A stretch of DNA of 64,000 nt, taken from contig CM052820.1 of the NCBI GenBank assembly GCA_028534125.1, positions 15,066,001 through 15,130,000 on the forward strand. The letters are read 5' to 3'. A program made the translations under genes and the position numbers. Below, piece after piece: positions 33,105 to 63,769 of this stretch (positions are counted from its first letter, which is position 1; each line of letters begins with the position of its first letter). Source of the stretch: Lama glama. Taxonomy: Eukaryota. Under the pieces are notes generated by a model. That model saw only the letters and a list, made by a program, of their open reading frames with translations. It was not told where the DNA came from and made no database searches.

Positions 33105-42752
<9,648 letters not shown>

Positions 42753-42818
42753 GGCCTCTTGGAAAGACTTCTCTTGCACTCGAGAAGGGGACATTCTCAG
42801 CTGAGCTGAAGCTGGATT

Positions 42819-42824
42819 ATTAAA
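42819..42824 (+). terminator. DNPEP: DNPEP polyadenylation signal ATTAAA
   Basis: 66 nt after the stop codon; the same hexamer is kept at the equivalent place in two duplicated copies (51004, 63046). Confidence 0.75.
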
Positions 42825-43821: not shown

Positions 43822-44291
43822 ATTAGGGGTTGAATTGTGTCCGCCCAAAAATGTTGAAATCCTAACCCCTAGTACCTATCAGCGTGTTCTTACTTAGAAA
43901 TAGGGTCTTTGCAGATGATCAAGTTAAGATGAGGTCATTATTGTGGGTCCTCATCGAATATGACTGTGTCCTTGTAAAAAGGGGAAATGTGGACACACAG
44001 ACAGACATGCACAGAGGGAAGAAGATATGAAGACAGGGAGGATGCTGTGTGAAAATATAGGATCCGAGTGATGCATTTACAAGCCAAGGAGAGTCAAAGA
44101 TTGCCAGCAAACCACGTGAAGNNNNNNNNNNNNNNNNNNNNNNNNNNNNNNNNNNNNNNNNNNNNNNNNNNNNNNNNNNNNNNNNNNNNNNNNNNNNNNN
44201 NNNNNNNNNNNNNNNNNNNNNNNNNNNNNNNNNNNNNNNNNNNNNNNNNNNNNNNNNNNNNNNNNNNNNNNNNNNNNNNNNNNNNNNNNNN
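43822..44291 (+). mobile_element. MaLR LTR (MLT1-type), 3' part covered by an N run (44122-44291)
   Basis: gggttgaattgtgtcc...gaaatcctaacccctagtacc...gaaatagggtctttgcagatg. Confidence 0.8.
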
Positions 44292-47515: not shown

Positions 47516-50024
47516 TAGAATTCCTTTGAAATTGAGAATAAGTTAAGAATGCCTGCTATTCTGTTTCTATTGAACACTGTACTGTAGGTCCTGAATTGGA
47601 GTGGGCAACTCCGAGTGTATGGTGAATAGAAGACATGAAAGTTGGGGGTGGAGAGAGGGAGGTGATTCCTTAGGAGAAAGTGTCTCACACTTCCTGGAAG
47701 CAGTTTCATGGTAGCAGGGCTCAGAAGGGAGGTTGGCTTTGAGTTCGAATTACTACTATTAATCACCATAGGTTTTAATGTGCAAATCATGCCTTAGTGT
47801 TTTCAAAGCACTCTTTACATCTTCAGCCTCATTTGATTCTCATAACAGCATCATTATTAAATTCCCGCTTGATCACATAATACATGCCAAGCACTGTGCT
47901 AAGAAACTTACATGCATTGGCTCCTGTCATTCTCTCAACGACTCTCTGAAGTTAGTCATTTCATAGATGAGAAAACTGAAGCTTGGCAAGTTTAATTAAA
48001 TTTCCCTTGGTCACAGAGCTAGTAAGAACAGGGACTCAAATACTGAGCTGGGCAGAAGGCAAACTCCTGCACCCCAGCCAGTCTCTGGATTCCTCCACCT
48101 TGTGGTCGCTGTGCACTTTAGGGAAAGTGGAAATTCAAATCACACTCTGGTTTCTGGGGTGGGTCTGTCAGACTGGCCCAAGTGTTAGCTCATTCCATCC
48201 TTTCACCATGATATCACTAGAGATGTGAAGACTCAGAAGTTGGAGCACACGCCCAGCCTCCATGGCCCGGAGACCTGCTCAAGGGATGGGCAGGCGACCT
48301 TTCCCACCAAAACCACCAGGCCAAGGTATGTGAGGCCTGTGCCCTGTCCACACTGCACATGTCTGGTAGACAGAGCAATTGGGAAGGAAATGAGTTTTAG
48401 GGCTATAGGTAGGAGCTGTCAGAAGTCCTATGAATAGAATGAAGACAGGGCCTGTCTGATTTCAGCCAGAAGCAACCCCATGATCCATTAGTGATGTCTG
48501 CAAAGGGAGGGGAGTGGGAAGCACACCTTCTATTTGCTATCCCCAACTTAATCTTTGTCTTCTAGGGGCAAGCTCCAAGAGAAACTGCCACTGTTTTTCC
48601 CTAGGGTGAGAGTCCTTCATGGATTTTGGGCCTCTTCTCTTCTTCCCTGGGCCCTTTCACCCTTTTCTCTTCACCTTTGACTCCTGGCTTCCCTCCCCTC
48701 AGAGCCCAGTGACCGAGGTGAACAGGGAGCAATGCTTGAACTCTGAAGTGGTTTCAGAGGCCCTGAACCAAGAGGTGACCAACCCCAGCAAGGCCTTGCT
48801 GTGTGTGTTTTGGTGAGGGGGGCTGGCCTTGTCCAGGAAGGCTGAGCCAGCCAAGAGTCTGTTTAAAGAGGGAGGCAAGGTGAAGGAAGGGACAGGTGTT
48901 GGCTGATAAGGAATGACAGGACTCCACTGAGCCTGATGGAGAACCTTCAGGAAGAGAGGGCCTGGAGGATAGGAAAGAACAGCGCTTTCAGTACAGACAA
49001 AGCCAGCCCAATCCTGGCTCTGTCGCTGCCCAGCTGTGACCTTGGACACATTATCCAAGCCCTTCAAGTCCCTTCTTCCACAGCTGTGAAATGGGGATGG
49101 TAGTCATGGTGACCCTCAGGGATTGATGTAAGAATTAAAGACAACTGTATGAAAAACGCCTTGGCTGCCAGTGGTTGCTGGATTCTAAGGGAGATTCTTC
49201 CTTTTGCCCACTGGAGGGTGCCCCCACAAGCATCTTTACACAGACACCTTTACACAGATTGCAGAAATGTGAGATACAGGGGCTGCGGGTCTCCAGTGGC
49301 CTGGTGTTCTGTAAGATCAAGCACAGGCACAGAGCTCGAAGGACCTGCAGAAATCTACTTCAGAACTTGTCTAACTTAAAAAGTATATACACAAGCCCTG
49401 TTTTTCTAAGAAAATCTTCAGTATGACATGACCCTAATCCTCCCCTCACCCACCCATCCGTATGTATTATACGTACATACATAAAGATTTTGTCCTAAAA
49501 TGAAGTGGGAGAGACGTAGCCAGAGCACCTTACATTCAGCCTCCCCCTTGCTCTTCTCTTGGTGTCGAGGAATTCACCTGAGTAAAGCTTTCAGGCATCT
49601 CCTTGGGACCCTTAAGTTCTTTGGCGCCAGGAGAGAAAATCTCCCATCTAATAGATATCTACCCGTCTTTACAGATGAGAAACTGAATGGGCAGGTGTGG
49701 AGCAGAACTAGACCAAGTGTCCTGACTCCCAGCCGTCCCTCTGCACTGCCCACACCCTTCCTCCCAGGGACCCTGGTAGAGGTTGGGCTGCTTCACACCT
49801 CAGACTTTTTTATTCAAGGATTGCCTGAGGAGGTGACTACTTGAACTTTAACCTAAAGGACACAAAGAAACAGCCAGGGGGAGAGCTGGAGGAAGAGTCC
49901 GGAAGGCGGGGAGAAGCAAATACAGTCGCCCTTAGGTGTGATGGTAGAACTTTCAGGGCAATGGACAGTATGGCCTGTGGCAGGAGAGGAGCTTGGAGAT
50001 GAGGCCCAGGACTACTCAAGGTTT

Positions 50025-50155
50025 TTTTTTTCAAACATTTTTTTATTGAGTTATAGTCATTGTACAATGCTGTGTCAAAGTCCAGTGTAGAGCACAATTT
50101 TTCAGTTATACATGAACATACATATATTCATTGTCACATTTTTTTTCGCTGTGAG
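50025..50155 (-). mobile_element. Short LINE-1 3' end inside copy A
   Basis: Poly(T) start and TSD ctcaaggttt at 50015 and 50156. Confidence 0.8.
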
Positions 50156-51650
50156 CTCAAGGTTTATAATCTACAGACAGCCTCTGGGTTTGATTCAAAA
50201 TGCAGTGGGAAATCATCAGGGGATTTTAAAGGAAAGAACAGGAAAATATGATAAATATTTTCTAAAGTTACACTGATGCTGATGGAAAAATAGATTATGA
50301 AATGGACAAGAAGAGAAGCAAGTAGACATTTTTGGGGCTACTGAGTTATCCAGACAGGATCTGTTGGTACCTCAGACTAAGATCGGGGCAGCGTTGCTGA
50401 GAAGCTCCACCTGGGCTCTGTCTGGAGGCGGCCTGCTCCTCAGAGGCACTCCAGCCCTTCACCCCTTTCAGAGACACTAGTCCCATCCCTGTCACCATGG
50501 CAGCAGAGCTTCCTTAGCTCGTATTGGCTGCTGGACCACATTATCGGTCCTGTGACTGACCCTGTGATGAGGACTGGTTACCATGGTTCTATCAAGTATG
50601 TAAACAAGGAGCTGCCAGTCTCCTCCAGGCTCAGGGGACGAACCAGCCCTGTGTCTAACAGAAAATCTGTGGTAGGAGATGGGACTAGAGACGGGGGCCA
50701 GGGGAGGGCCTGCAGTCTGACAGTTCCTGAGCCACTAGTCTCAGGGCCTATTCAGATCAAGACTGCTATTGAGATTCCTTCTGAATTTGGTTGAGGTGGG
50801 GTGGGTGAGGGAGTAGCAACACCTACCTCATTGCATTCACTGAAAATTGCTAGTTTCTTCCCATTTTAGGGTGTTCTTGAGCTGTTCCCTACTCTGAGTC
50901 ACAACCTTGCAGCTGATTAAGGCCTCAGGGGAAGCCTCCCATCCTCCACACCTTCCCTGGTGCTTTCCAGAAGGGCAATTTCAGGCTGATCCAAATATGG
51001 GTTATTAAAGCCAATTTCCAAGCAAACTCTTTCTACAGACTTGTCTAGAAGTAGGATGGGCGGGGCTTGGACCTGACCAGAGTCTCAGAGGTGAGAGAAG
51101 TGGGATCCGAACACAGGGGAGCTTGGGGTATGGAGGACAGAGAGCACAGCCCCTGGTTGCCCTGCAGGCCTGGTTTCAGATCCCTTCCTCCTCCCACAGC
51201 CCATTTCTAAGGCAGGTTAGAGGCAAGGTGGAATTGCAGCCAGAGCAGCAGCCATCCCTACTCATAGCCTTCAGATGTTTCTCCTTGGTCTTCCTTCCAT
51301 TTGTGGAAGGAAAATGTTCTCTCCAGAGCCCAAGTCTGAAAGGCCTGGTATGTTGCTCTGCCTTTTGAGGTTCACGGTATCCTCTGAGCATTGGGGTCCC
51401 CTACAGAGAAGTCATGCCAGTCCTGGCCCCAAGAAACCACACAGAGAATAATGCAGCTAAAGGCTATGCACATTTAACAGGTTGATATCTGTGGCCAGTT
51501 TGCCCTGGGAGGCAGGAAATTAGTCACCATTGCTCAACACAGCCGAACTCCAGCTGTCGCGTGTTCCAGGATTTACATTTCTCAAAGCACCTCACACTCA
51601 GTTCATTTGATCCTTGCAAATAGGAGCACATGGAAAAGTATCAAGACCAC

Positions 51651-52022
51651 TGTCTTAATCTGTTTGGGCTGCTATAACAAAATACCATAAACGTGGTGGC
51701 TTGTAAACAACGGAAATTTATTTCTCATAATTCTAGAGGCTGGGAAGACCAAGATTAAAGCCCTGGCAGATTAGGTGTCTGGTGAGGGCCTGCTTCTTGG
51801 CTCATAGATGGCACCATCTTGCTGTAACTTCACATGGTGGAAGGGTGAGAGNNNNNNNNNNNNNNNNNNNNNNNNNNNNNNNNNNNNNNNNNNNNNNNNN
51901 NNNNNNNNNNNNNNNNNNNNNNNNNNNNNNNNNNNNNNNNNNNNNNNNNNNNNNNNNNNNNNNNNNNNNNNNNNNNNNNNNNNNNNNNNNNNNNNNNNNN
52001 NNNNNNNNNNNNNNNNNNNNNN
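51651..52022 (-). mobile_element. MaLR LTR (MLT1A-like), partly covered by an N run (51852-52022)
   Basis: tgtcttaatctgtttgggctgctataacaaaataccataaac...aaatttatttctcataattctagaggctgggaag. Confidence 0.8.
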
Positions 52023-54479: not shown

Positions 54480-55320
54480 CTTACACAGAGGACAGAAGAA
54501 GATCATTAGGGCTTTTAAGGAAATGAGTAGAATAATAATGCAAAAATTTTAAAGACCAGCTTAGTACTGTTGGAGAATGTATTGACAGAGGGCAAGAGTG
54601 GAACAGACAGATCTGTTAGGAAGTATTATTTTGGTCCAGGGAATACTGCAGTAGTTTGAACTGGGCAACCACACAGAGCCGAGAACCTCCAGCTGGCCAT
54701 GGACTTTACCCAGAGGAGCCTGAGCCTCAAGGGGAATGCTCTCCAAGGAAACAGCTTCTGACTTCTGTCACCATGGCAACTGTGCTTCATTTGCCCAGAA
54801 TGGTTGCTGGGGTGACACATCAGCACTGAGTGACTGATCACCACAATAAGAACTGGTTACCATGGTATAAAGTCTGCAAACAAGAAGCTGCCATTCTTCT
54901 CCAGGTTAGAGTTCTTGACTAGCTATAAATCTAAGAGAAAATCAGGAGCTGGAGAGAAGATCAGGGCCAGAGAGCCAAGGGGAGGCCAGCTGTGGGGCAG
55001 TTGCTGAGTCATTTTGCCTCAGGACTTGCCCAAATCAAGACAGCTATTAGAGGGGAAAGGGGAGTTTACATTGTAGAGAGGGAGTACTCCAGCACATATA
55101 CACACAAATTACAAATTCCACATTTCCTTCCATTTTAGGGCTTCTTTGAACTGTTTCCTTCTCCAAGCAAAACTTTGTAGCTGACTGAAGCATCGCTATC
55201 CTCCACCCACTGCACTGCCATTTAGAGGGGCAGGTCTAAGACAACTTGCTTCCGAATTTTTAAAGTGGGTTTTGGTCAAAATCCTTCTTGTGGGCTTGTC
55301 TGATGGCAGGAAATGTGGGC
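54480..55320 (+). pseudogene. Further duplicate fragment (copy B): DNPEP exon 14 relic, intron and frameshifted terminal exon
   Basis: ttttag|GGCTTCTTTGAACTGTTTCCTTCT at 55139 (GFFELFPSPSKTL*, 1-nt deletion); upstream 54686-54910 aligns with 42260-42500, 50400-50630 and 62487-62720. Confidence 0.85.
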
Positions 55321-57716: not shown

Positions 57717-59992
57717 ATGCAGCGCCTGCTGTGGCCTGGGGGCTCCCGGGGGCTCTGGCTGCTCCTCTGTTTCCTGCTTCTGAACAGCCGCCCAGGGGGC
57801 TGCAGCGACATTGGTGGCCACGGTCAGGAGGAAACCTGGGGGGTGCGGGCAAGGCTAGAGAGCGATTCTGAGCGAAGCACGCTGGGATGGGGGAGCTCAA
57901 GGTTTGGAACTTAAGAGGAAAGTAATGTGTTTAGGGGTGAAAATAGATGAATGTAGAGAGCATCTCGCCCAAAGAGGCGCAGGCTTGGAGTGGGGCTCGG
58001 CATAGGGGCTCTGCGACTCAGAGGACTCAGGGAAGCCCACTCAGGGGAAGACTGGGGATTTGGGAAGAGGACGGGGAAACATGCATTGGGGGAAGTAAAA
58101 CTGGCCTGTGAGGCCGCAAGAAAAGCAAGACGAGCCAAGGGGCCAGGGAAAAGATGCCTATGGCTGAGGGGTAGGCAGGGGACTAGAATCTCTAGACTGC
58201 AGGAGCAGGGACCGCGGGTTATCGGAGTCCTGGCTCCGAAGAGAAGGCTGGGCCGAGGGATGAGCCAAGGCTTCTTTATAAGCCCCCCAGAGCCTGGTGT
58301 CAGCGATCCAATTTCTGCTAAGAAGTGGAAGGCTAGGCCGGGGTAGAAGAGGATGGAGAGAGAAACAGTCCATCCTTTTTCCATCCCCTTCACTCTGAGC
58401 CAGCCAGGTAGACCATCGCTGACTCATGTCTGAGCTGCCAGAGACCGACTGCGCAGACTCAGGGATTCCAGCGCCTGGCGCGTGGGGCAGACGGCGCAAA
58501 CTCAGAGCCTAACGCCAACTTTCCTCCCCCGATCTGTGGGGTTTAGATGCCAATGCAGAGGACTCCCGAAGAACTGTGGGAGGAGGCCTGATGTCAAGCG
58601 ACAGGAAGCAAGGCGTGGGGAGCGGGTGGGGGTTGGTTGTGAGGACGATCAAGCCTTGTGGGAATGCCCAGCTCTCTTCACCGCTCAAAGTCGCCCCCAT
58701 GTCAGGCTTTGGCCATCACTCAGCACCGCGGACAGCGCCAGGAGCCCTGTGGGTCTGACCCAGGGTGTCCAGTTCACTGCTTTTCCTATCCGTTCTGGGA
58801 GTGCTGCCTCAGAGAACAATCTCTCCTTCCAGAAGCTCTTTTCCTTCTCAACAGGGTGCTGGAGGTTCTGGTCCTTCCTAAAGCCAGGAAATTAATATTA
58901 GGATCCATTTGACTGGGGAGAATTCGCAGTCCATAATGACTTGTGGTAATTCCACTATAGGGAAAACAAACAAACAAACAGACTCCAGTCCTACCCACCT
59001 ACCTGGAATAAGGAAAGTGTGTATAGCATTAGGGATTATCTCCATCTCCTTTCCTTCCCTTATGCAGTCTGCCAAACTGTGGCTTTCAGAACAAGGATCC
59101 AGACACTCAAACCCTATACATACCATACTTTTTTTCCTTTAAGGATTCCAGGCCTCCTCTGTAATCCCCTCCAGGCTTCAAAGACTTCCCTGAATGCAAT
59201 TTGCCTGTTTTCCATGCCCTGCCTGTTCACCTGATTATCCATTTCATGTGTGTAGCTTTCTGAGTCTCTGCTTATCTTAACCTCCACAGGATGCTCTTTG
59301 CCTGTAAGCTTGGTTCTTACTGGAAGTTGGTGCCAAAGATGAATGAGATTCAGGGGCTGAAGAACAGGGAAAGTGGTGATGGGGAGGGAAATATGAAAAG
59401 AAGGAGGACTTGAAATTAGGAGGGGGTCTGATGAGGGGGACAGAGACCAGTGAACCCAGGGATGTTAGTGGGAGGAAGCTGCTTTCCTTCAACTGGGATT
59501 TGTAAGTCTTCTGGCCAGGCTCCTTTCTCACACCACTATTTTGCTCTTAGATGGTCAGAGCCAAGTGGGAGTGGGGCAGCTCTGGTCCCTCCAAGGATTT
59601 ACTACCCCAGTCTTCCAGCGCTTGCAAGTTTTCTTCCAGCAGATTGTGCCTCAAGGTGAGTAAAAGGTGAAGAGAGTCTGGGACCTGGTCAGATACAAGG
59701 GTAGGTAATAATGAGGGGCTTTTTATTTGAGAACAGGTTTTCTTCCCCAGATATCTCTTCTTGAAACTTTTCTGTCATGCTTACCTCCTGGAGGACCAGG
59801 TGGGACCAGAGTAAGTGTGGAGCTGGAAGGACAGGCTGTTTGCACTTGAACATCCTGGAAGAACCCAGTAGAGGCTTCTAGAAGAAGCCCTTGGAAGATG
59901 TCAGCATCCAACTCCTTGAGACTAGCCCCAACCCCAACCACAGGCACTATCTGAGATTTTACAGAGACAGGAATCCTTAAATTCTCAGCCAG

Positions 59993-60043
<51 letters not shown>

Positions 60044-62968
60044 CAGCTTCTGAGTAGGAAGCAGAGCAGATTATAGGACAAATAGAAGGGAGGGATGAAG
60101 GGAGTGAGGAGCCTCTTGAAGACAAATGGCCAACCCTTCCTTATAGCAGAGTTGCATGAATGAGAGAAGAGTCCCATAGGAAATGCAGCTTGAGTTCATT
60201 GTACTACTACCACTACGAATGTCTATCATGTTTATAATGCCTTAGAGCAGCGGTTCTCAAAGTGCATCCCTGGACCAGTAGCAGCATCACCAGGAGACTT
60301 GTTAGAAATGCTAATTCTTGAGCGTCATCTCAGACCTCTTGAATCAGAAACTCTAGGAGTGAGGAACAACAATCTGTGTTTTAACAAGCTTTTTGGGAGA
60401 TTCTGATGCACCCTAAAGTTTGGAAATCACTGTCTTAGTTTTCTCAGCAATTTTTATATCCCTAATCTCATTTAATCCTCACAATAGCATCAAATGAATC
60501 AGCAAAAAGAGTATAGTCTTAATCCTAACTGAACATTTATTACATGCCAGGAACTGTGCTATGCAACTTTTATATGTCATCTCATTTAATTCTCTCCACA
60601 AATTGTGATCTTTTATCTACCTGAGGGAGAGGGGGAGTGTTGATCTCACTCTGGTCCCTGGAGTGGGCCAGTTAGAACATCCCCGGTGTTAATTCACCAC
60701 ATCTTTTCACCCTGCAGGTTTGTTCTGGAAGGATGACATGACCCAGAATGTGATGACCCAGAAGATGGGACACATTAGCAAACTCCATCCCCAGGATCCA
60801 TGTGTGAGGGTTGGACAGGCAGCCTTTCCCACCAGAACCACTGGGATGAGGTATGTGAGGCCTATGGTCAGTCCATGCTGTCTGACTGACAGACAGAGCA
60901 AGGAGGGAGCAGGCATTAATGCAGGTAAGAGCTGCCAGGAGCACTATGAGAATGATTCAGAGGTCCTGTCTGTGATCTGCAGGAAACAGTTCCATGAGCC
61001 ATTAGTAATGTCTGCAAAGGGAGAGGAGGCGGGTGCTAACAAGCCTAGGTCCCATTTATCATCCCCATGTCTTTTAGGGGCAAGCAAGAGGAGAAACTTC
61101 GACTCTTATTCCCCAAGGTGAGACCCATGTGTCTTCTCAAGACATGAATCCTGACTTTGGGTCCCATCTCTTTCCCTCAGGGGCTCTGCCACCTTTTTCT
61201 GTCTCCTTCTTGATTCCTGTCTTCCTTCTTCACAGAGCCCAATGGCCAAGGTGAACAAGGATCAGTGCTTTACCTCCAGAGTGGTTTCAAAGGCCTTGAA
61301 ACAAGAGGTGGCCAACCCTGTCAAGGTGAGGGCTCACTTTTTCTTGGGAGGCTAGAATCACCAAAGACTTCTTTAAATGAGGGAGGCAGGTGTGAAGGAG
61401 GGAATGGGCATTGGGATGTGAACAAAAAAGCTGAAGAAAATATCTTTCCCAATTGAATGGTACCCAGATTTTCCTGTCTCTCAGACCACCTTTGGGTGTC
61501 CAAATAAGAGGTTGAGGGGCATGATGCAGGTGCTGAGAGCCTCTAAGGGTGAAATGATCTATAGTATCATGAAAAACAATTGAGTTTAAAATAGGCATGC
61601 AAAATTGAAGGGTTTCACAATTAAGTAAAAGGTCCCTCTTTTCTCCATACACTCCTCTGTATATAGCAAGTGATAGTGAAGTTACTTTGGATGAATGGAA
61701 GAGGTAGCCCAGAGGCCTTTGCATTCAGCACCTCCCTGCCTTGCTCTACTCTGTGGCCTGAGTGAGCATCCCAAGGTTCTGCATTATCTCTTTGGGATGC
61801 TTGAACACTTCAGAATTCGACTGAAAACACTCATATAGCCCTCCCATCTATCTTTATAGATAAGACATTGGGGCCCAGGCTGGTCAAGCAGCTTACTCAA
61901 GGCTTCATAGCAGGTTCATGGCAGAGCAAAGACTGGACCCAGGTGTCCTGATTCTCAGCCCTTTCCCCTGCAAAGCCTCTACCCTTCCTCTCAGGGACTG
62001 CAGCAGGGGTTGGGCTGTCCCACATACCAGACTCTTCAACATGGACAAGTCTTTTTTTGGACTAAGGCCTAAATTACAAGAAGGTGCCAGCCAGAGGACA
62101 ATATAAAGGAAGGGCATCCAAGGCAGAGAGCACCATACTGACAAATGCCCTGAGACAAAGATCCATAGTATGTCTGAGGGACAGATGGAAAAGTCAGTGG
62201 TAGAGAATTAGGTTAGAGAATGTAGGACTGGGGTTGACCACACAAGGACTCATAGATCATGGTGGAAGGTTTGGATTTTATTCCAAGTGTGGTGGCAAGT
62301 CGATGGGGAAATTTTAAGGAAAGGGATATCATAATGTGATATGATTTGAAAAGACCACTCTAGTGATATTGGGGGATGGATTGTGAGAAAACTAAGAGTG
62401 AAAACTAAGAGGCCTATAAGGAGCTGATCATCCTGGTACAAGGGAGACTGAGGTGGCTTGGACTGGAATGGTGGCAGTGGAGTCGGCACCTCCAGCTGGC
62501 CGTGCACTCCATCCAGAGGCATCCTGCTTCTCTGGGGCTTCCAGCCCCTTATGCTCTCCTAGGAAACCTGTTCTCACTCCCATAAGATGGCAGCTGGGCT
62601 TCCTAAGCCTGGATCGGCTGCTGGGTCGGAGCACACAGAGCTAAGTGAAGACCACCTTTGGGAGACTTGTTGGTGTGGTGCTTTCAAGAAAACAAACAAG
62701 ATACTGCCATGCTTCTCCAGCCTGAGCCCAAGGGAAAATCACAGGATGAGAACCCTATGAATTCCATGTGGGAGCAAGGGGACAAGCACTCAATCGATGG
62801 ACTGAGTTACTGTGGGCTTACTTAAATCAGGCTGTTACTGAAGCATTTTGGAACGAGTAGGTGAGGGAGGGGCCACCTTCCCACATACTGATTCCAATCC
62901 TTTGTTTCTTGTTTTAGGGCTTCTTTGAGTCACCCTCCACTGTAGGCCACAACCTTGTCGCTGACTGA
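57717..62968 (+). CDS. RESP18: Regulated endocrine-specific protein 18, 6 coding exons, 174 aa, with signal peptide
   Basis: Exons 57717-57822, 59551-59655, 60718-60850, 61078-61117, 61236-61325, 62918-62968 = 525 nt, all GT-AG and in frame: [61 protein letters not shown]...[16 protein letters not shown]...[16 protein letters not shown]. Position next to DNPEP fits known synteny. Confidence 0.95.
58719..58739 (+). promoter_or_regulatory. RE1/NRSE (REST binding site) in RESP18 intron 1
   Basis: CTCAGCACCGCGGACAGCGCC matches 19 of 21 positions of the consensus TTCAGCACCACGGACAGCGCC. Confidence 0.9.
59995..60041. repeat. (CA)n microsatellite in RESP18 intron 2
   Basis: Perfect dinucleotide run. 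Confidence 0.97.
60248..60432. mobile_element. MER5A-like hAT MITE in RESP18 intron 2
   Basis: 185 nt, terminal inverted repeats cagcggttctcaaagt / agtttggaaatcactg, degenerate 8-nt TSD ccttagag / tcttagtt. Confidence 0.85.
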
Positions 62969-63045
62969 GACCTCGTGCAAGCCTCTCTGCCCCAGTGCCC
63001 TCCCCATTGCCCTCCAGGGAGGTAGTTCCAGGATGAATCTCCAAC

Positions 63046-63051
63046 ATTAAA
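63046..63051 (+). terminator. RESP18: RESP18 polyadenylation signal ATTAAA
   Basis: 77 nt after the stop codon, in a context homologous to the DNPEP signal. Confidence 0.75.
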
Positions 63052-63769
63052 GTGGCTTTCATGCAAACTCTCTGTGACTTGCCCTGAGGCAGGATGGGTG
63101 GGGTTTGGACCTGGCTAGAGTCCTCTAAGTGAGAGAGGCAGGACCTGAACAGGGGGTGGGGTGAGAAGAACACAGCGCCTTGGTATTGCTCAAAGGCTGC
63201 TTTCTGTCCTGTTTTCCTTCCTGAAGTAGGGAAAGTGAGGGTGGGACCATAGCTAGAAAGGCTAGCCTTCTCTGCCCACATCTGATGATGCTCTATGATC
63301 CAGTTGCCCACCCATCCTTCCATGTCAGACTTGCTTGGATGGTGCTGTTCTATGAGGGTCTCCACCTCCAGCATTACAGCCCCTGCCAAGGCTCTCCCAT
63401 TCTTTGTGCTTCCAAGAATCAACATAAAAGTGCTGTAATCAAAGTGTACGCACATTAAATGTTTTGCTGACTCTTGCTAGTTTGCTCCTGGTAGCTTAAA
63501 ATTTTTAAAAGGAGTGAGTAATCTGATCACTTGTGATCAGCCAAATACCAGAATGTCCTATCCGCAGAGCTTTATACTTCCCAAGACACTCTCATACTCA
63601 TTGGACATTCACAGGTACATGAAAATGGGCAAATATCTAGATTTTGTTTCTCTAAGAAATTGGGACTTGGCCACACACCACATCCATTTAAACAACCCAG
63701 AGAAATTAAGTGACTAGTTCTTGATGGCACAGATTCTTTGTCATGCTGCTGTTCTTGCCCTCTCTACTT

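What the first reader, a model, noticed from the sequence alone, without database searches (positions are those of the whole stretch)
60925..63150. RESP18 is chimeric: its 3' half is a same-frame duplicate of DNPEP exons 12, 13 and 15
Seen directly: RESP18 exon 4 (61078-61117) and DNPEP exon 12 (38914-38953) are both 40 nt, phase 2 to 0, 32/40 nt identical ([13 protein letters not shown] vs [13 protein letters not shown]). Exon 5 [30 protein letters not shown] aligns without gaps to DNPEP exon 13 [30 protein letters not shown] (14/30 aa), ending 12 nt earlier. The last exons are both 51 nt ([16 protein letters not shown] vs [16 protein letters not shown], 8/16) with ATTAAA in the same context. 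Introns also align. Established: exons 1-3 resemble the luminal N-terminus of PTPRN/IA-2, the next gene on the other side. Inference: a tandem duplication fused the 5' end of PTPRN to the 3' end of DNPEP, so that pieces of a cytosolic peptidase became the tail of a secretory-granule protein. I do not know whether the DNPEP half has been reported.
Basis: partly seen in the sequence, partly recalled or inferred. Interest (0 to 1): 0.92.

Follow-up and report, generated by a model that had tools for sequence, protein, structure and literature searches.

The report
RESP18 tail copied from DNPEP
The last third of the neuroendocrine protein RESP18, with its 3' untranslated end, is an old DNA copy of the last exons of the neighbouring peptidase gene DNPEP, read in the peptidase's frame and well conserved in placental mammals, so RESP18 is a chimeric gene built from two neighbours.

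Summary
The window is camelid. Its six RESP18 exon pieces translate exactly to alpaca RESP18 XP_006207285.1 (174 aa).

RESP18 60931-62980 aligns collinearly, on the same strand, with the DNPEP 3' end at 38754-42764. The three HSPs score 123, 45.5 and 43.7 bits, against at most 29.2 bits in 100 shuffles. The alignment covers introns 11 and 12, exons 12, 13 and 15, a dead relic of exon 14, the stop codon and the ATTAAA signal.

A profile of 12 placental RESP18 proteins finds only DNPEP chains in the PDB (E 1.7e-5; next hit 0.68). The DNPEP-derived tail (residues 115-174) is the best conserved part of RESP18: 22/60 invariant columns against 6/79 in the PTPRN-like part. It is present in Afrotheria and Boreoeutheria. 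No non-placental RESP18 appeared among 138 hits.

The tail carries none of the five M18 metal ligands, so it is not a peptidase.

The order DNPEP-RESP18-PTPRN fits a single tandem duplication with breakpoints in DNPEP intron 11 and a PTPRN intron. The PTPRN side lies outside the window. Two further partial copies show a more complex history.

No paper searched reports this.

The parts
57717..57822 (+). RESP18 exon 1 coding part (start codon, signal peptide), ends in phase 1
   Evidence: Read. The translation equals residues 1-35 of alpaca RESP18 P0063.
59551..59655 (+). RESP18 exon 2 (PTPRN-like RESP18 domain, first part)
   Evidence: Pfam PF14948 positions 1-34, E 3e-13. Equals P0063 residues 37-70.
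60718..60850 (+). RESP18 exon 3 (RESP18 domain, second part), ends in phase 2
   Evidence: Pfam PF14948 positions 36-78, E 1.7e-19. Equals P0063 residues 72-114.
60851..60930 (+). 5' part of RESP18 intron 3 with no DNPEP match: the fusion junction lies here
   Evidence: DNPEP homology starts at 60931 = DNPEP 38754. DNPEP exon 11 ends near 38523, so the DNPEP breakpoint lies in intron 11 between about 38524 and 38754.
60931..61077 (+). 3' part of RESP18 intron 3, derived from DNPEP intron 11
   Evidence: 69% identity over 160 aligned columns.
61078..61117 (+). RESP18 exon 4 = copy of DNPEP exon 12 (DNPEP D357-K369)
   Evidence: 40 nt each, phase 2 to 0, 32/40 nt identical. Equals P0063 residues 116-128.
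61118..61235 (+). RESP18 intron 4, derived from DNPEP intron 12
   Evidence: 64% identity over 116 columns.
61236..61325 (+). RESP18 exon 5 = copy of the first 90 nt of DNPEP exon 13 (DNPEP G370-G399), with a new donor 12 nt upstream of the DNPEP donor
   Evidence: The 30 aa alone find only DNPEP chains in the PDB. Equals P0063 residues 129-158.
62493..62602 (+). Dead relic of the 3' part of DNPEP exon 14 (includes the His440 codon) and the start of intron 14, inside RESP18 intron 5
   Evidence: HSP with 42265-42376, E 6e-6. The 5' half of the exon is missing, there is a 1-nt deletion, and the donor GT is changed to GA.
62918..62968 (+). RESP18 exon 6 coding part with stop codon = copy of DNPEP exon 15 (G460-D475)
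   Evidence: Equals P0063 residues 159-174.
62969..63051 (+). RESP18 3' UTR with ATTAAA at 63046-63051, aligned with the DNPEP 3' UTR and its ATTAAA at 42819-42824
   Evidence: Four-copy alignment.
38914..38953 (+). Parent: DNPEP exon 12
39078..39179 (+). Parent: DNPEP exon 13
   Evidence: Pfam PF02127 positions 340-373, E 7e-7.
42169..42336 (+). Parent: DNPEP exon 14 (168 nt, 56 codons, holds His440)
   Evidence: Pfam PF02127 positions 375-429, E 4e-23. His440 is a zinc ligand (PMC3472314).
42702..42752 (+). Parent: DNPEP exon 15 coding part with stop codon
47781..51113 (+). Copy B: 5'-truncated RESP18-like relic (exon 3-, 4-, 5-, 6-like pieces free of stops, exon 14 relic, 3' flank)
   Evidence: Collinear HSPs with RESP18 60421-63151, best E 5e-61. 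Piece-wise tblastn. Alignments.
54685..55194 (+). Copy C: partial copy holding the exon 14 relic and an exon 15-like piece with a 1-nt deletion

Best explanation
RESP18 is a chimeric gene. Its promoter side, signal peptide and RESP18-domain exons 1-3 are of the PTPRN type. Everything from the middle of intron 3 onwards is a DNA-level copy of the 3' end of the upstream neighbour DNPEP. That copy covers exons 4, 5 and 6, the introns between them, the stop codon, the 3' UTR and the ATTAAA signal.

The simplest origin is one tandem segmental duplication. It would run from DNPEP intron 11 to the PTPRN intron that follows its RESP18-domain exons. Such an event leaves DNPEP and PTPRN intact and creates a PTPRN-5'/DNPEP-3' fusion between them, in the same orientation.

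Both junction introns are phase 2, so the DNPEP exons are read in the peptidase's own frame. Two later changes also kept that frame. DNPEP exon 14 (168 nt, 56 codons) was lost from the transcript and survives as a dead relic. The donor of exon 13 moved 12 nt upstream.

The event predates the split of Afrotheria and Boreoeutheria. The 60-residue tail carries none of the five M18 metal ligands and cannot be a peptidase. It is nevertheless the most conserved part of RESP18, so it has been kept by selection as a luminal C-terminal segment of this ER and secretory-granule protein.

Shown: homology, frame, use in the annotated protein, conservation, and presence across placentals. Inferred: a single tandem duplication, the eutherian-stem date, and any function of the tail.
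For: There are three collinear same-strand HSPs (E 8e-30, 6e-6, 2e-6), all above every one of 100 shuffles. The three- and four-way alignments show homology through introns 11 and 12, the same stop position and an aligned ATTAAA.

The exon pieces equal alpaca RESP18 XP_006207285.1 at residues 1, 37, 72, 116, 129 and 159. Exon 5 alone finds only the three DNPEP sequences in 177,635 PDB sequences. The profile of 12 RESP18 proteins gives 4dyo at E 1.7e-5, 7u5h at 1.8e-4 and 3var at 2e-4, with the next hit at 0.68.

The tail has a mean pairwise identity of 0.746 with 22/60 invariant columns. The PTPRN-like part has 0.630 with 6/79. The tail is present in tenrec, elephant shrews, rodents, primates, carnivores, ungulates and cetaceans.

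The direction of transfer is clear, because Pfam M18 covers DNPEP exons 13-14. Published gene lists give the order PTPRN, RESP18, DNPEP. The PTPRN N-terminus is a RESP18 domain. Intron K2P distance between DNPEP and RESP18 is 0.40-0.52, which fits an age of roughly 100 My.
Against: PTPRN is outside the window. Homology of the RESP18 5' half to PTPRN was therefore tested only through Pfam PF14948 and the literature, and PTPRN's orientation rests on my own knowledge.

A 43-aa exon 3 query found no PTPRN among 1.8 billion representatives at E up to 0.001. No RNA reads could be laid, so use of the exons rests on annotation and on database proteins.

Alternative isoforms exist that read exon 4 in another frame. 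Camelid X2/X3 use a donor after 60924, and macaque X1 retains intron 3. Copies B and C show that more than one duplication happened here.

Absence from marsupials is only an absence of hits among annotated proteins. AlphaFold2 gives no confident structure (pLDDT 51).
Confidence: 0.8

Rival explanations
1. Stepwise assembly. Fragments of the DNPEP 3' end and of the PTPRN 5' end were duplicated separately and only later joined by deletion or new splicing, rather than by one tandem duplication. Free-standing DNPEP 3' fragments like copy C could be the first stage.
For: The interval holds two further partial copies (B at 47781-51113, C at 54685-55194), so the region duplicated repeatedly. Copy C holds only the exon 14 relic and exon 15.
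Against: B, C and RESP18 share derived states against DNPEP: the missing 5' half of exon 14, the same 1-nt deletion, and NL(V/A)AD in place of NLLVD. B also contains RESP18 exon 3 and parts of RESP18 introns 2 and 3. B and C therefore look like later copies of the chimera, not its precursors. One event explains the order, the orientation and two intact parents.
Confidence: 0.14
2. The DNPEP-derived exons are a neutral passenger. They are spliced into annotated models but the tail has no function of its own, or the productive isoforms end before it or read it in another frame.
For: Predicted isoforms read exon 4 in the +1 frame and stop in exon 5. These are camelid X2/X3 (P0001) and macaque X1 (P0012). 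Other isoforms use an alternative last exon at 61485-61583. No RNA reads were obtained here.
Against: The tail is the most conserved part of the protein across 12 placentals, including two afrotherians: 22/60 invariant columns against 6/79. The loss of exon 14 and the donor shift both preserved the frame. Rodent RESP18 of 175 aa carries the same tail.
Confidence: 0.04
3. The similarity is chance, convergence, or gene conversion between unrelated 3' ends.
For: Each single-exon protein match is weak on its own (exon 5 alone: E 0.069).
Against: The nucleotide alignment has E 8e-30 and runs through introns. There are three collinear blocks, equal exon sizes and phases, the same stop position and the same poly(A) signal context. 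No shuffle comes close.
Confidence: 0.01

Closest known systems
DNPEP (aspartyl aminopeptidase, peptidase family M18)
   Same: RESP18 residues 115-174 are homologous to DNPEP residues about 356-399 and 460-475, in the same frame and with the same exon boundaries. RESP18 K133 and F140 align with the DNPEP P1-pocket residues K374 and Y381.
   Different: Only 60 of 475 residues are present. All five metal ligands (H94, D264, E302, D346, H440) are absent from the mRNA. There is no Pfam M18 match. The protein is luminal and secretory, not cytosolic. A Cys invariant across RESP18 proteins (C139) replaces the DNPEP Arg.
PTPRN/IA-2 and PTPRN2 N-terminal RESP18 homology domain
   Same: RESP18 exons 2-3 match Pfam PF14948. 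The literature assigns this domain to the first hundred or so residues of PTPRN and PTPRN2. RESP18 lies next to PTPRN.
   Different: RESP18 lacks the Cys-rich segment of the PTPRN domain and everything downstream of the domain. The homology to PTPRN does not extend into the tail.
Chimeric genes made by partial tandem duplication of two neighbours, such as Drosophila Sdic (AnnX + Cdic) or human CHRFAM7A (from my own knowledge, not tested here)
   Same: A new gene lies between or beside its two parents. It takes the 5' exons and regulation of one parent and the 3' exons of the other, with intron homology that proves DNA-level duplication.
   Different: RESP18 is far older, at least as old as the placental crown. 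It is single-copy and conserved, and it joins a secretory-pathway head to a fragment of a cytosolic enzyme.

Membership tests
Peptidase M18 (DNPEP) | Pfam PF02127 match above the gathering score | tested here: not met
   RESP18 exon 5 and the full-length RESP18 proteins P0063, P0106, P0057 and P0025 give no PF02127 hit at E up to 10. DNPEP exons 13 and 14 do hit.
Peptidase M18 (DNPEP) | H.D.E.D.H binuclear metal-ligand signature (H94, D264, E302, D346, H440; PMC3472314) | tested here: not met
   The copied segment starts at DNPEP residue 356, after D346. The His440 codon survives only in the dead exon 14 relic at 62493-62602, outside the mRNA.
Peptidase M18 (DNPEP) | Homology (common descent) of the segment with DNPEP | tested here: met
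   DNA alignment including introns, E 8e-30. A RESP18 profile finds only DNPEP in the PDB, E 1.7e-5.
RESP18 family (Pfam PF14948) | PF14948 match above the gathering score, and identity to annotated RESP18 | tested here: met
   P0063 scores E 4e-56. The window exon pieces are identical to alpaca XP_006207285.1.
Chimeric gene from tandem duplication of two neighbours | DNA-level homology, introns included, with the 3' parent, which lies next to the chimera on the same strand | tested here: met
   DNPEP ends at 42.8 kb and RESP18 starts at 57.7 kb, both on the + strand.
Chimeric gene from tandem duplication of two neighbours | DNA-level homology with the 5' parent, which lies next to the chimera on the other side in the same orientation | not testable with these tools
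   PTPRN is beyond the window end. The only evidence is the Pfam domain, the literature and published gene order. Orientation comes from my own knowledge.
Chimeric gene from tandem duplication of two neighbours | The fused exons are joined in a real transcript | tested here: inconclusive

The most novel reading that the evidence does not exclude
The DNPEP-derived tail may be the functional core of RESP18 rather than an appendage. It is the most conserved part of the protein. It keeps the KVN motif whose lysine (DNPEP K374) lines the acidic-residue P1 pocket of the peptidase. It has also gained an invariant Cys139, which could form a disulfide with the invariant Cys99 of the PTPRN-derived part in the oxidising ER lumen. 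If so, a fragment of a cytosolic metallopeptidase has been exapted as a new luminal peptide- or cargo-binding or sorting module, born on the eutherian stem.
Probability: 0.12. Interest if true: 0.8.

Novelty: new member of a known kind. Interest (0 to 1): 0.62.

Why it matters
RESP18 is used as a neuroendocrine marker, and it gave its name to the RESP18 homology domain of the diabetes autoantigen IA-2 (PTPRN). Its own function is still unclear.

Knowing that its most conserved third comes from DNPEP explains the origin of a gene that so far appears only in placentals. It is also a clean, old mammalian example of a gene born by partial tandem duplication across two neighbours.

The result has practical consequences:
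- It tells experimenters which part of RESP18 is not PTPRN-like.
- It corrects a domain boundary. Pfam PF14948 runs to residue 139 of RESP18 and so includes 25 DNPEP-derived residues.
- It probably explains why UniProt names the panda RESP18 entry G1MEF3 'Aspartyl aminopeptidase'.

Tried and rejected
RNA evidence:
- The look-up of sequencing runs listed RNA contig runs holding 5-9% of the words.

Cross-species DNA:
- I wanted it for dN/dS, for the relic and for the PTPRN flank.

Joined spliced model:
- I did not build or send one. The exons were searched one by one by reference.
- For full-length work I used database proteins, of which P0063 is identical to the window exon by exon.

Searches that gave little:
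- Pfam on exon 5 alone found no M18 hit.
- The exon 3 search of 1.8 billion representatives found RESP18 proteins only, no PTPRN.
- AlphaFold2 on the 12-sequence alignment gave pLDDT 51 and pTM 0.15, so I made no fold search and drew no structural conclusion.
- tblastn for exon 1- or exon 2-like pieces in 43-57 kb found nothing convincing.

Literature:
- Ten searches found no paper that links RESP18 to DNPEP by homology.
- Zhang 2007, Atari 2019 and Kumarasamy 2018 are not held. I did not request Bloomquist 1994, so 'unreported' is not proven.

Sequences deliberately not followed:
- Cluster P0021 sits on about 200 metagenome contigs and is probably human contamination. I did not follow it.
- The human RESP18 entries listed by the tools (P0131, P0167) were not fetched or compared.
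- The N runs at 44122-44291 and 51852-52022 were left as they are.
Full report
WHAT IS THERE. The window carries DNPEP on the + strand. Its last four coding exons lie at 38914-38953, 39078-39179, 42169-42336 and 42702-42752. RESP18 lies about 15 kb downstream on the same strand.

I read the RESP18 exons from the sequence:
- exon 1 coding part: 57717-57822
- exon 2: 59551-59655
- exon 3: 60718-60850
- exon 4: 61078-61117
- exon 5: 61236-61325
- exon 6: 62918-62968, including the stop codon

Each piece was translated by reference. Each piece is an exact substring of a database protein, alpaca (Vicugna pacos) RESP18 XP_006207285.1 (P0063, 174 aa), at residues 1, 37, 72, 116, 129 and 159. The window is therefore camelid, and the annotated protein uses exactly the three exons in question.

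- Exon 4 and DNPEP exon 12 are both 40 nt, phase 2 to 0, with 32/40 nt identical.
- Exon 5 aligns without gaps to DNPEP exon 13, 14/30 aa identical, and ends 12 nt earlier.
- The last exons are both 51 nt, 8/16 aa identical, with the stop at the same place.
- ATTAAA sits in aligned context at 63046-63051 and 42819-42824.

blastn of the two regions gives three collinear same-strand HSPs:
- 60931-61328 with 38754-39170 (420 columns, 67%, E 8e-30)
- 62493-62602 with 42265-42376 (E 6e-6)
- 62887-62980 with 42667-42764 (E 2e-6)

In 100 dinucleotide-preserving shuffles the best HSP averaged 24.8 bits and never passed 29.2. The real HSPs score 123, 45.5 and 43.7 bits. The first block runs through non-coding sequence: the last 160 nt of DNPEP intron 11 (69% identity) and all of intron 12 (64%). 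This is a DNA-level duplication, not a retrocopy or convergence.

The second block is a relic of the 3' part of DNPEP exon 14, sitting inside RESP18 intron 5. It lacks the 5' half of the exon, has a 1-nt deletion, and its donor GT has become GA.

DIRECTION AND FRAME. DNPEP exons 13 and 14 match Pfam Peptidase_M18 up to position 429 of 432. M18 is a broadly distributed family, so DNPEP is the parent and RESP18 is the recipient.

RESP18 exon 3 ends in phase 2 and DNPEP exon 12 starts in phase 2, so the fusion reads the DNPEP exons in their own frame. The two later changes are both multiples of three. Exon 14 is 168 nt, and the new donor of exon 5 lies 12 nt upstream, where DNPEP has GGG GTG. The frame therefore runs on to the original stop.

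In human DNPEP numbering the tail corresponds to residues about 356-399 and 460-475. I derived the offset from the positions of K374 and Y381 in the 4dyo alignment.

PROTEIN-LEVEL TEST. I searched all 177,635 distinct PDB sequences:
- The 30 residues of exon 5 alone find three sequences at E up to 10, and all three are aspartyl aminopeptidases at the matching place (4dyo, E 0.069).
- Sheep and colugo family members give the same top hit (E 0.0067 and 0.0025).
- A profile of 12 full-length RESP18 proteins gives 4dyo at E 1.7e-5, 7u5h at 1.8e-4 and 3var at 2e-4, with the next hit at 0.68.

Pfam M18 itself does not reach RESP18.

CONSERVATION AND AGE. Two searches of the 5.8-billion-protein collection returned 88 and 138 RESP18-family proteins. 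All those listed are placentals. They include the afrotherians Tenrec, Rhynchocyon, Elephantulus, Trichechus and Dugong, with no marsupial, monotreme or other vertebrate.

Tenrec, elephant shrew, rodent, colugo, tarsier, rhinoceros, whale, hippopotamus and panda proteins all end with the same tail, [14 protein letters not shown] / SP..KVN..QCF... / GFF...TVG.NLVAD.

Across 12 species the tail (residues 115-174) has a mean pairwise identity of 0.746 and 22/60 invariant columns. The PTPRN-like residues 36-114 have 0.630 and 6/79. The tail has therefore been under purifying selection in the DNPEP frame since before the placental radiation.

Intron distances between the DNPEP and RESP18 copies (K2P 0.40-0.52) fit an age of roughly 100 My under usual mammalian neutral rates. 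This is a rough inference.

MECHANISM. Published gene lists for human 2q35 give the order PTPRN, RESP18, DNPEP, DES. The window shows DNPEP and then RESP18 on one strand.

A single tandem duplication from DNPEP intron 11 to the PTPRN intron after its RESP18-domain exons predicts exactly this layout. DNPEP stays intact, a fusion of the PTPRN 5' end and the DNPEP 3' end appears next, and PTPRN stays intact after it.

The DNPEP breakpoint lies between about 38524 and 38754. The junction in RESP18 lies within 60851-60930.

This step is an inference. PTPRN lies outside the window. Its homology to RESP18 exons 2-3 rests on Pfam PF14948 and on the literature.

The history is also more complex than one event:
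- Copy B (47781-51113) is collinear with RESP18 from intron 2 to the 3' flank. It has stop-free exon 3-, 4-, 5- and 6-like pieces.
- Copy C (54685-55194) holds the exon 14 relic and an exon 15-like piece.
- B, C and RESP18 share the truncated exon 14, the same 1-nt deletion, and NL(V/A)AD in place of NLLVD. They therefore descend from one chimera.
- Copy B's last exon, GVLELFPTLSHNLAAD, is intermediate between DNPEP and RESP18.

WHAT IT DOES. The tail cannot be a peptidase. Four of the five M18 metal ligands (H94, D264, E302, D346) lie upstream of the breakpoint. The fifth, H440, sits in the dead relic.

AlphaFold2 gives no confident fold for RESP18 (pLDDT 51). This fits the reported disorder of the RESP18 homology domain.

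My best reading is that the signal peptide of the PTPRN-type head carries the former cytosolic fragment into the ER lumen. There it has been kept as a short, probably flexible C-terminal segment.

Three details are worth testing. The invariant KVN aligns with DNPEP K374 of the P1 pocket. F140 aligns with Y381. Cys139 is invariant across RESP18 proteins and absent from DNPEP, so it could pair with the invariant Cys99. These are hypotheses only.

ISOFORMS. Some predicted isoforms do not keep the frame:
- Camelid X2/X3 use a donor after 60924, read exon 4 in the +1 frame and stop in exon 5.
- Macaque X1 retains intron 3, so sequence derived from DNPEP intron 11 is translated.
- An alternative last exon at 61485-61583 is used in predicted proteins of camel, pig and whale. 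Manatee, dugong and elephant-shrew models have alternative C-terminal ends of the same kind, which I did not align to this exon.

NOVELTY. Ten full-text searches found no paper that links RESP18 and DNPEP by homology. The two names co-occur only in gene lists for 2q35.

The RESP18HD papers I could read do not discuss the tail or its origin. Some older RESP18 papers are not held, so I cannot exclude an earlier remark.

Machines have seen the similarity. UniProt G1MEF3 (panda RESP18) carries the automatic name 'Aspartyl aminopeptidase'. Pfam's RESP18 domain runs to residue 139, 25 residues into DNPEP-derived sequence.

The mechanism (chimera by partial tandem duplication) is a known kind. This case appears to be a new member of it.

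LIMITS.
I worked beside those places afterwards.
- The other notes of this scan on the same window (copy B, the breakpoint, the exon 14 relic) agree with what I found.

Noticed in passing
window 47781-51113: Copy B is a 5'-truncated RESP18-like relic with stop-free exon 3-, 4-, 5- and 6-like pieces. Its exon 5-like piece is closer to colugo LOC103581357 (P0025, 22/33) than to colugo RESP18 (15/30). P0025 keeps the ancestral DNPEP exon 13 end (KAPLQ). A second RESP18-like gene may therefore be old and still annotated in some mammals.
   Followed up: partly
window 54685-55194: Copy C is a third partial copy. It holds the exon 14 relic and an exon 15-like piece with a 1-nt deletion. It shares the dead donor (GT to GA) with RESP18.
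   Followed up: partly
window 61485-61583: An alternative last exon lies in RESP18 intron 5 ([32 protein letters not shown]). Predicted isoforms of camel, pig and whale use it. Some afrotherian models (manatee, dugong, elephant shrew) have similar alternative C-terminal ends, not aligned here. It has no DNPEP match.
   Followed up: partly
window 60851-60924: An alternative donor after 60924 extends exon 3 by 74 nt (camelid isoforms X2/X3). Exon 4 is then read in the +1 frame ([13 protein letters not shown]) and translation stops in exon 5. In macaque isoform X1 the whole intron 3, partly derived from DNPEP intron 11, is translated.
   Followed up: partly
RESP18 protein residues 37-139 (window exons 2-5): Pfam PF14948 'RESP18 domain' (103 positions) covers exon 4 and the first 11 residues of exon 5. 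Its last 25 positions therefore model DNPEP-derived sequence, not PTPRN-like sequence.
   Followed up: partly
protein P0078 (panda RESP18, UniProt G1MEF3): This RESP18 entry carries the automatic UniProt name 'Aspartyl aminopeptidase'. The tail homology probably explains the name.
   Followed up: no
window 59994-60041: A long (CA)n microsatellite lies in RESP18 intron 2.
   Followed up: no
protein cluster P0021: A RESP18 exon 3-like 144-aa ORF is seen on about 200 metagenome contigs. It is probably human contamination of metagenomes, so I deliberately did not follow it.
   Followed up: no
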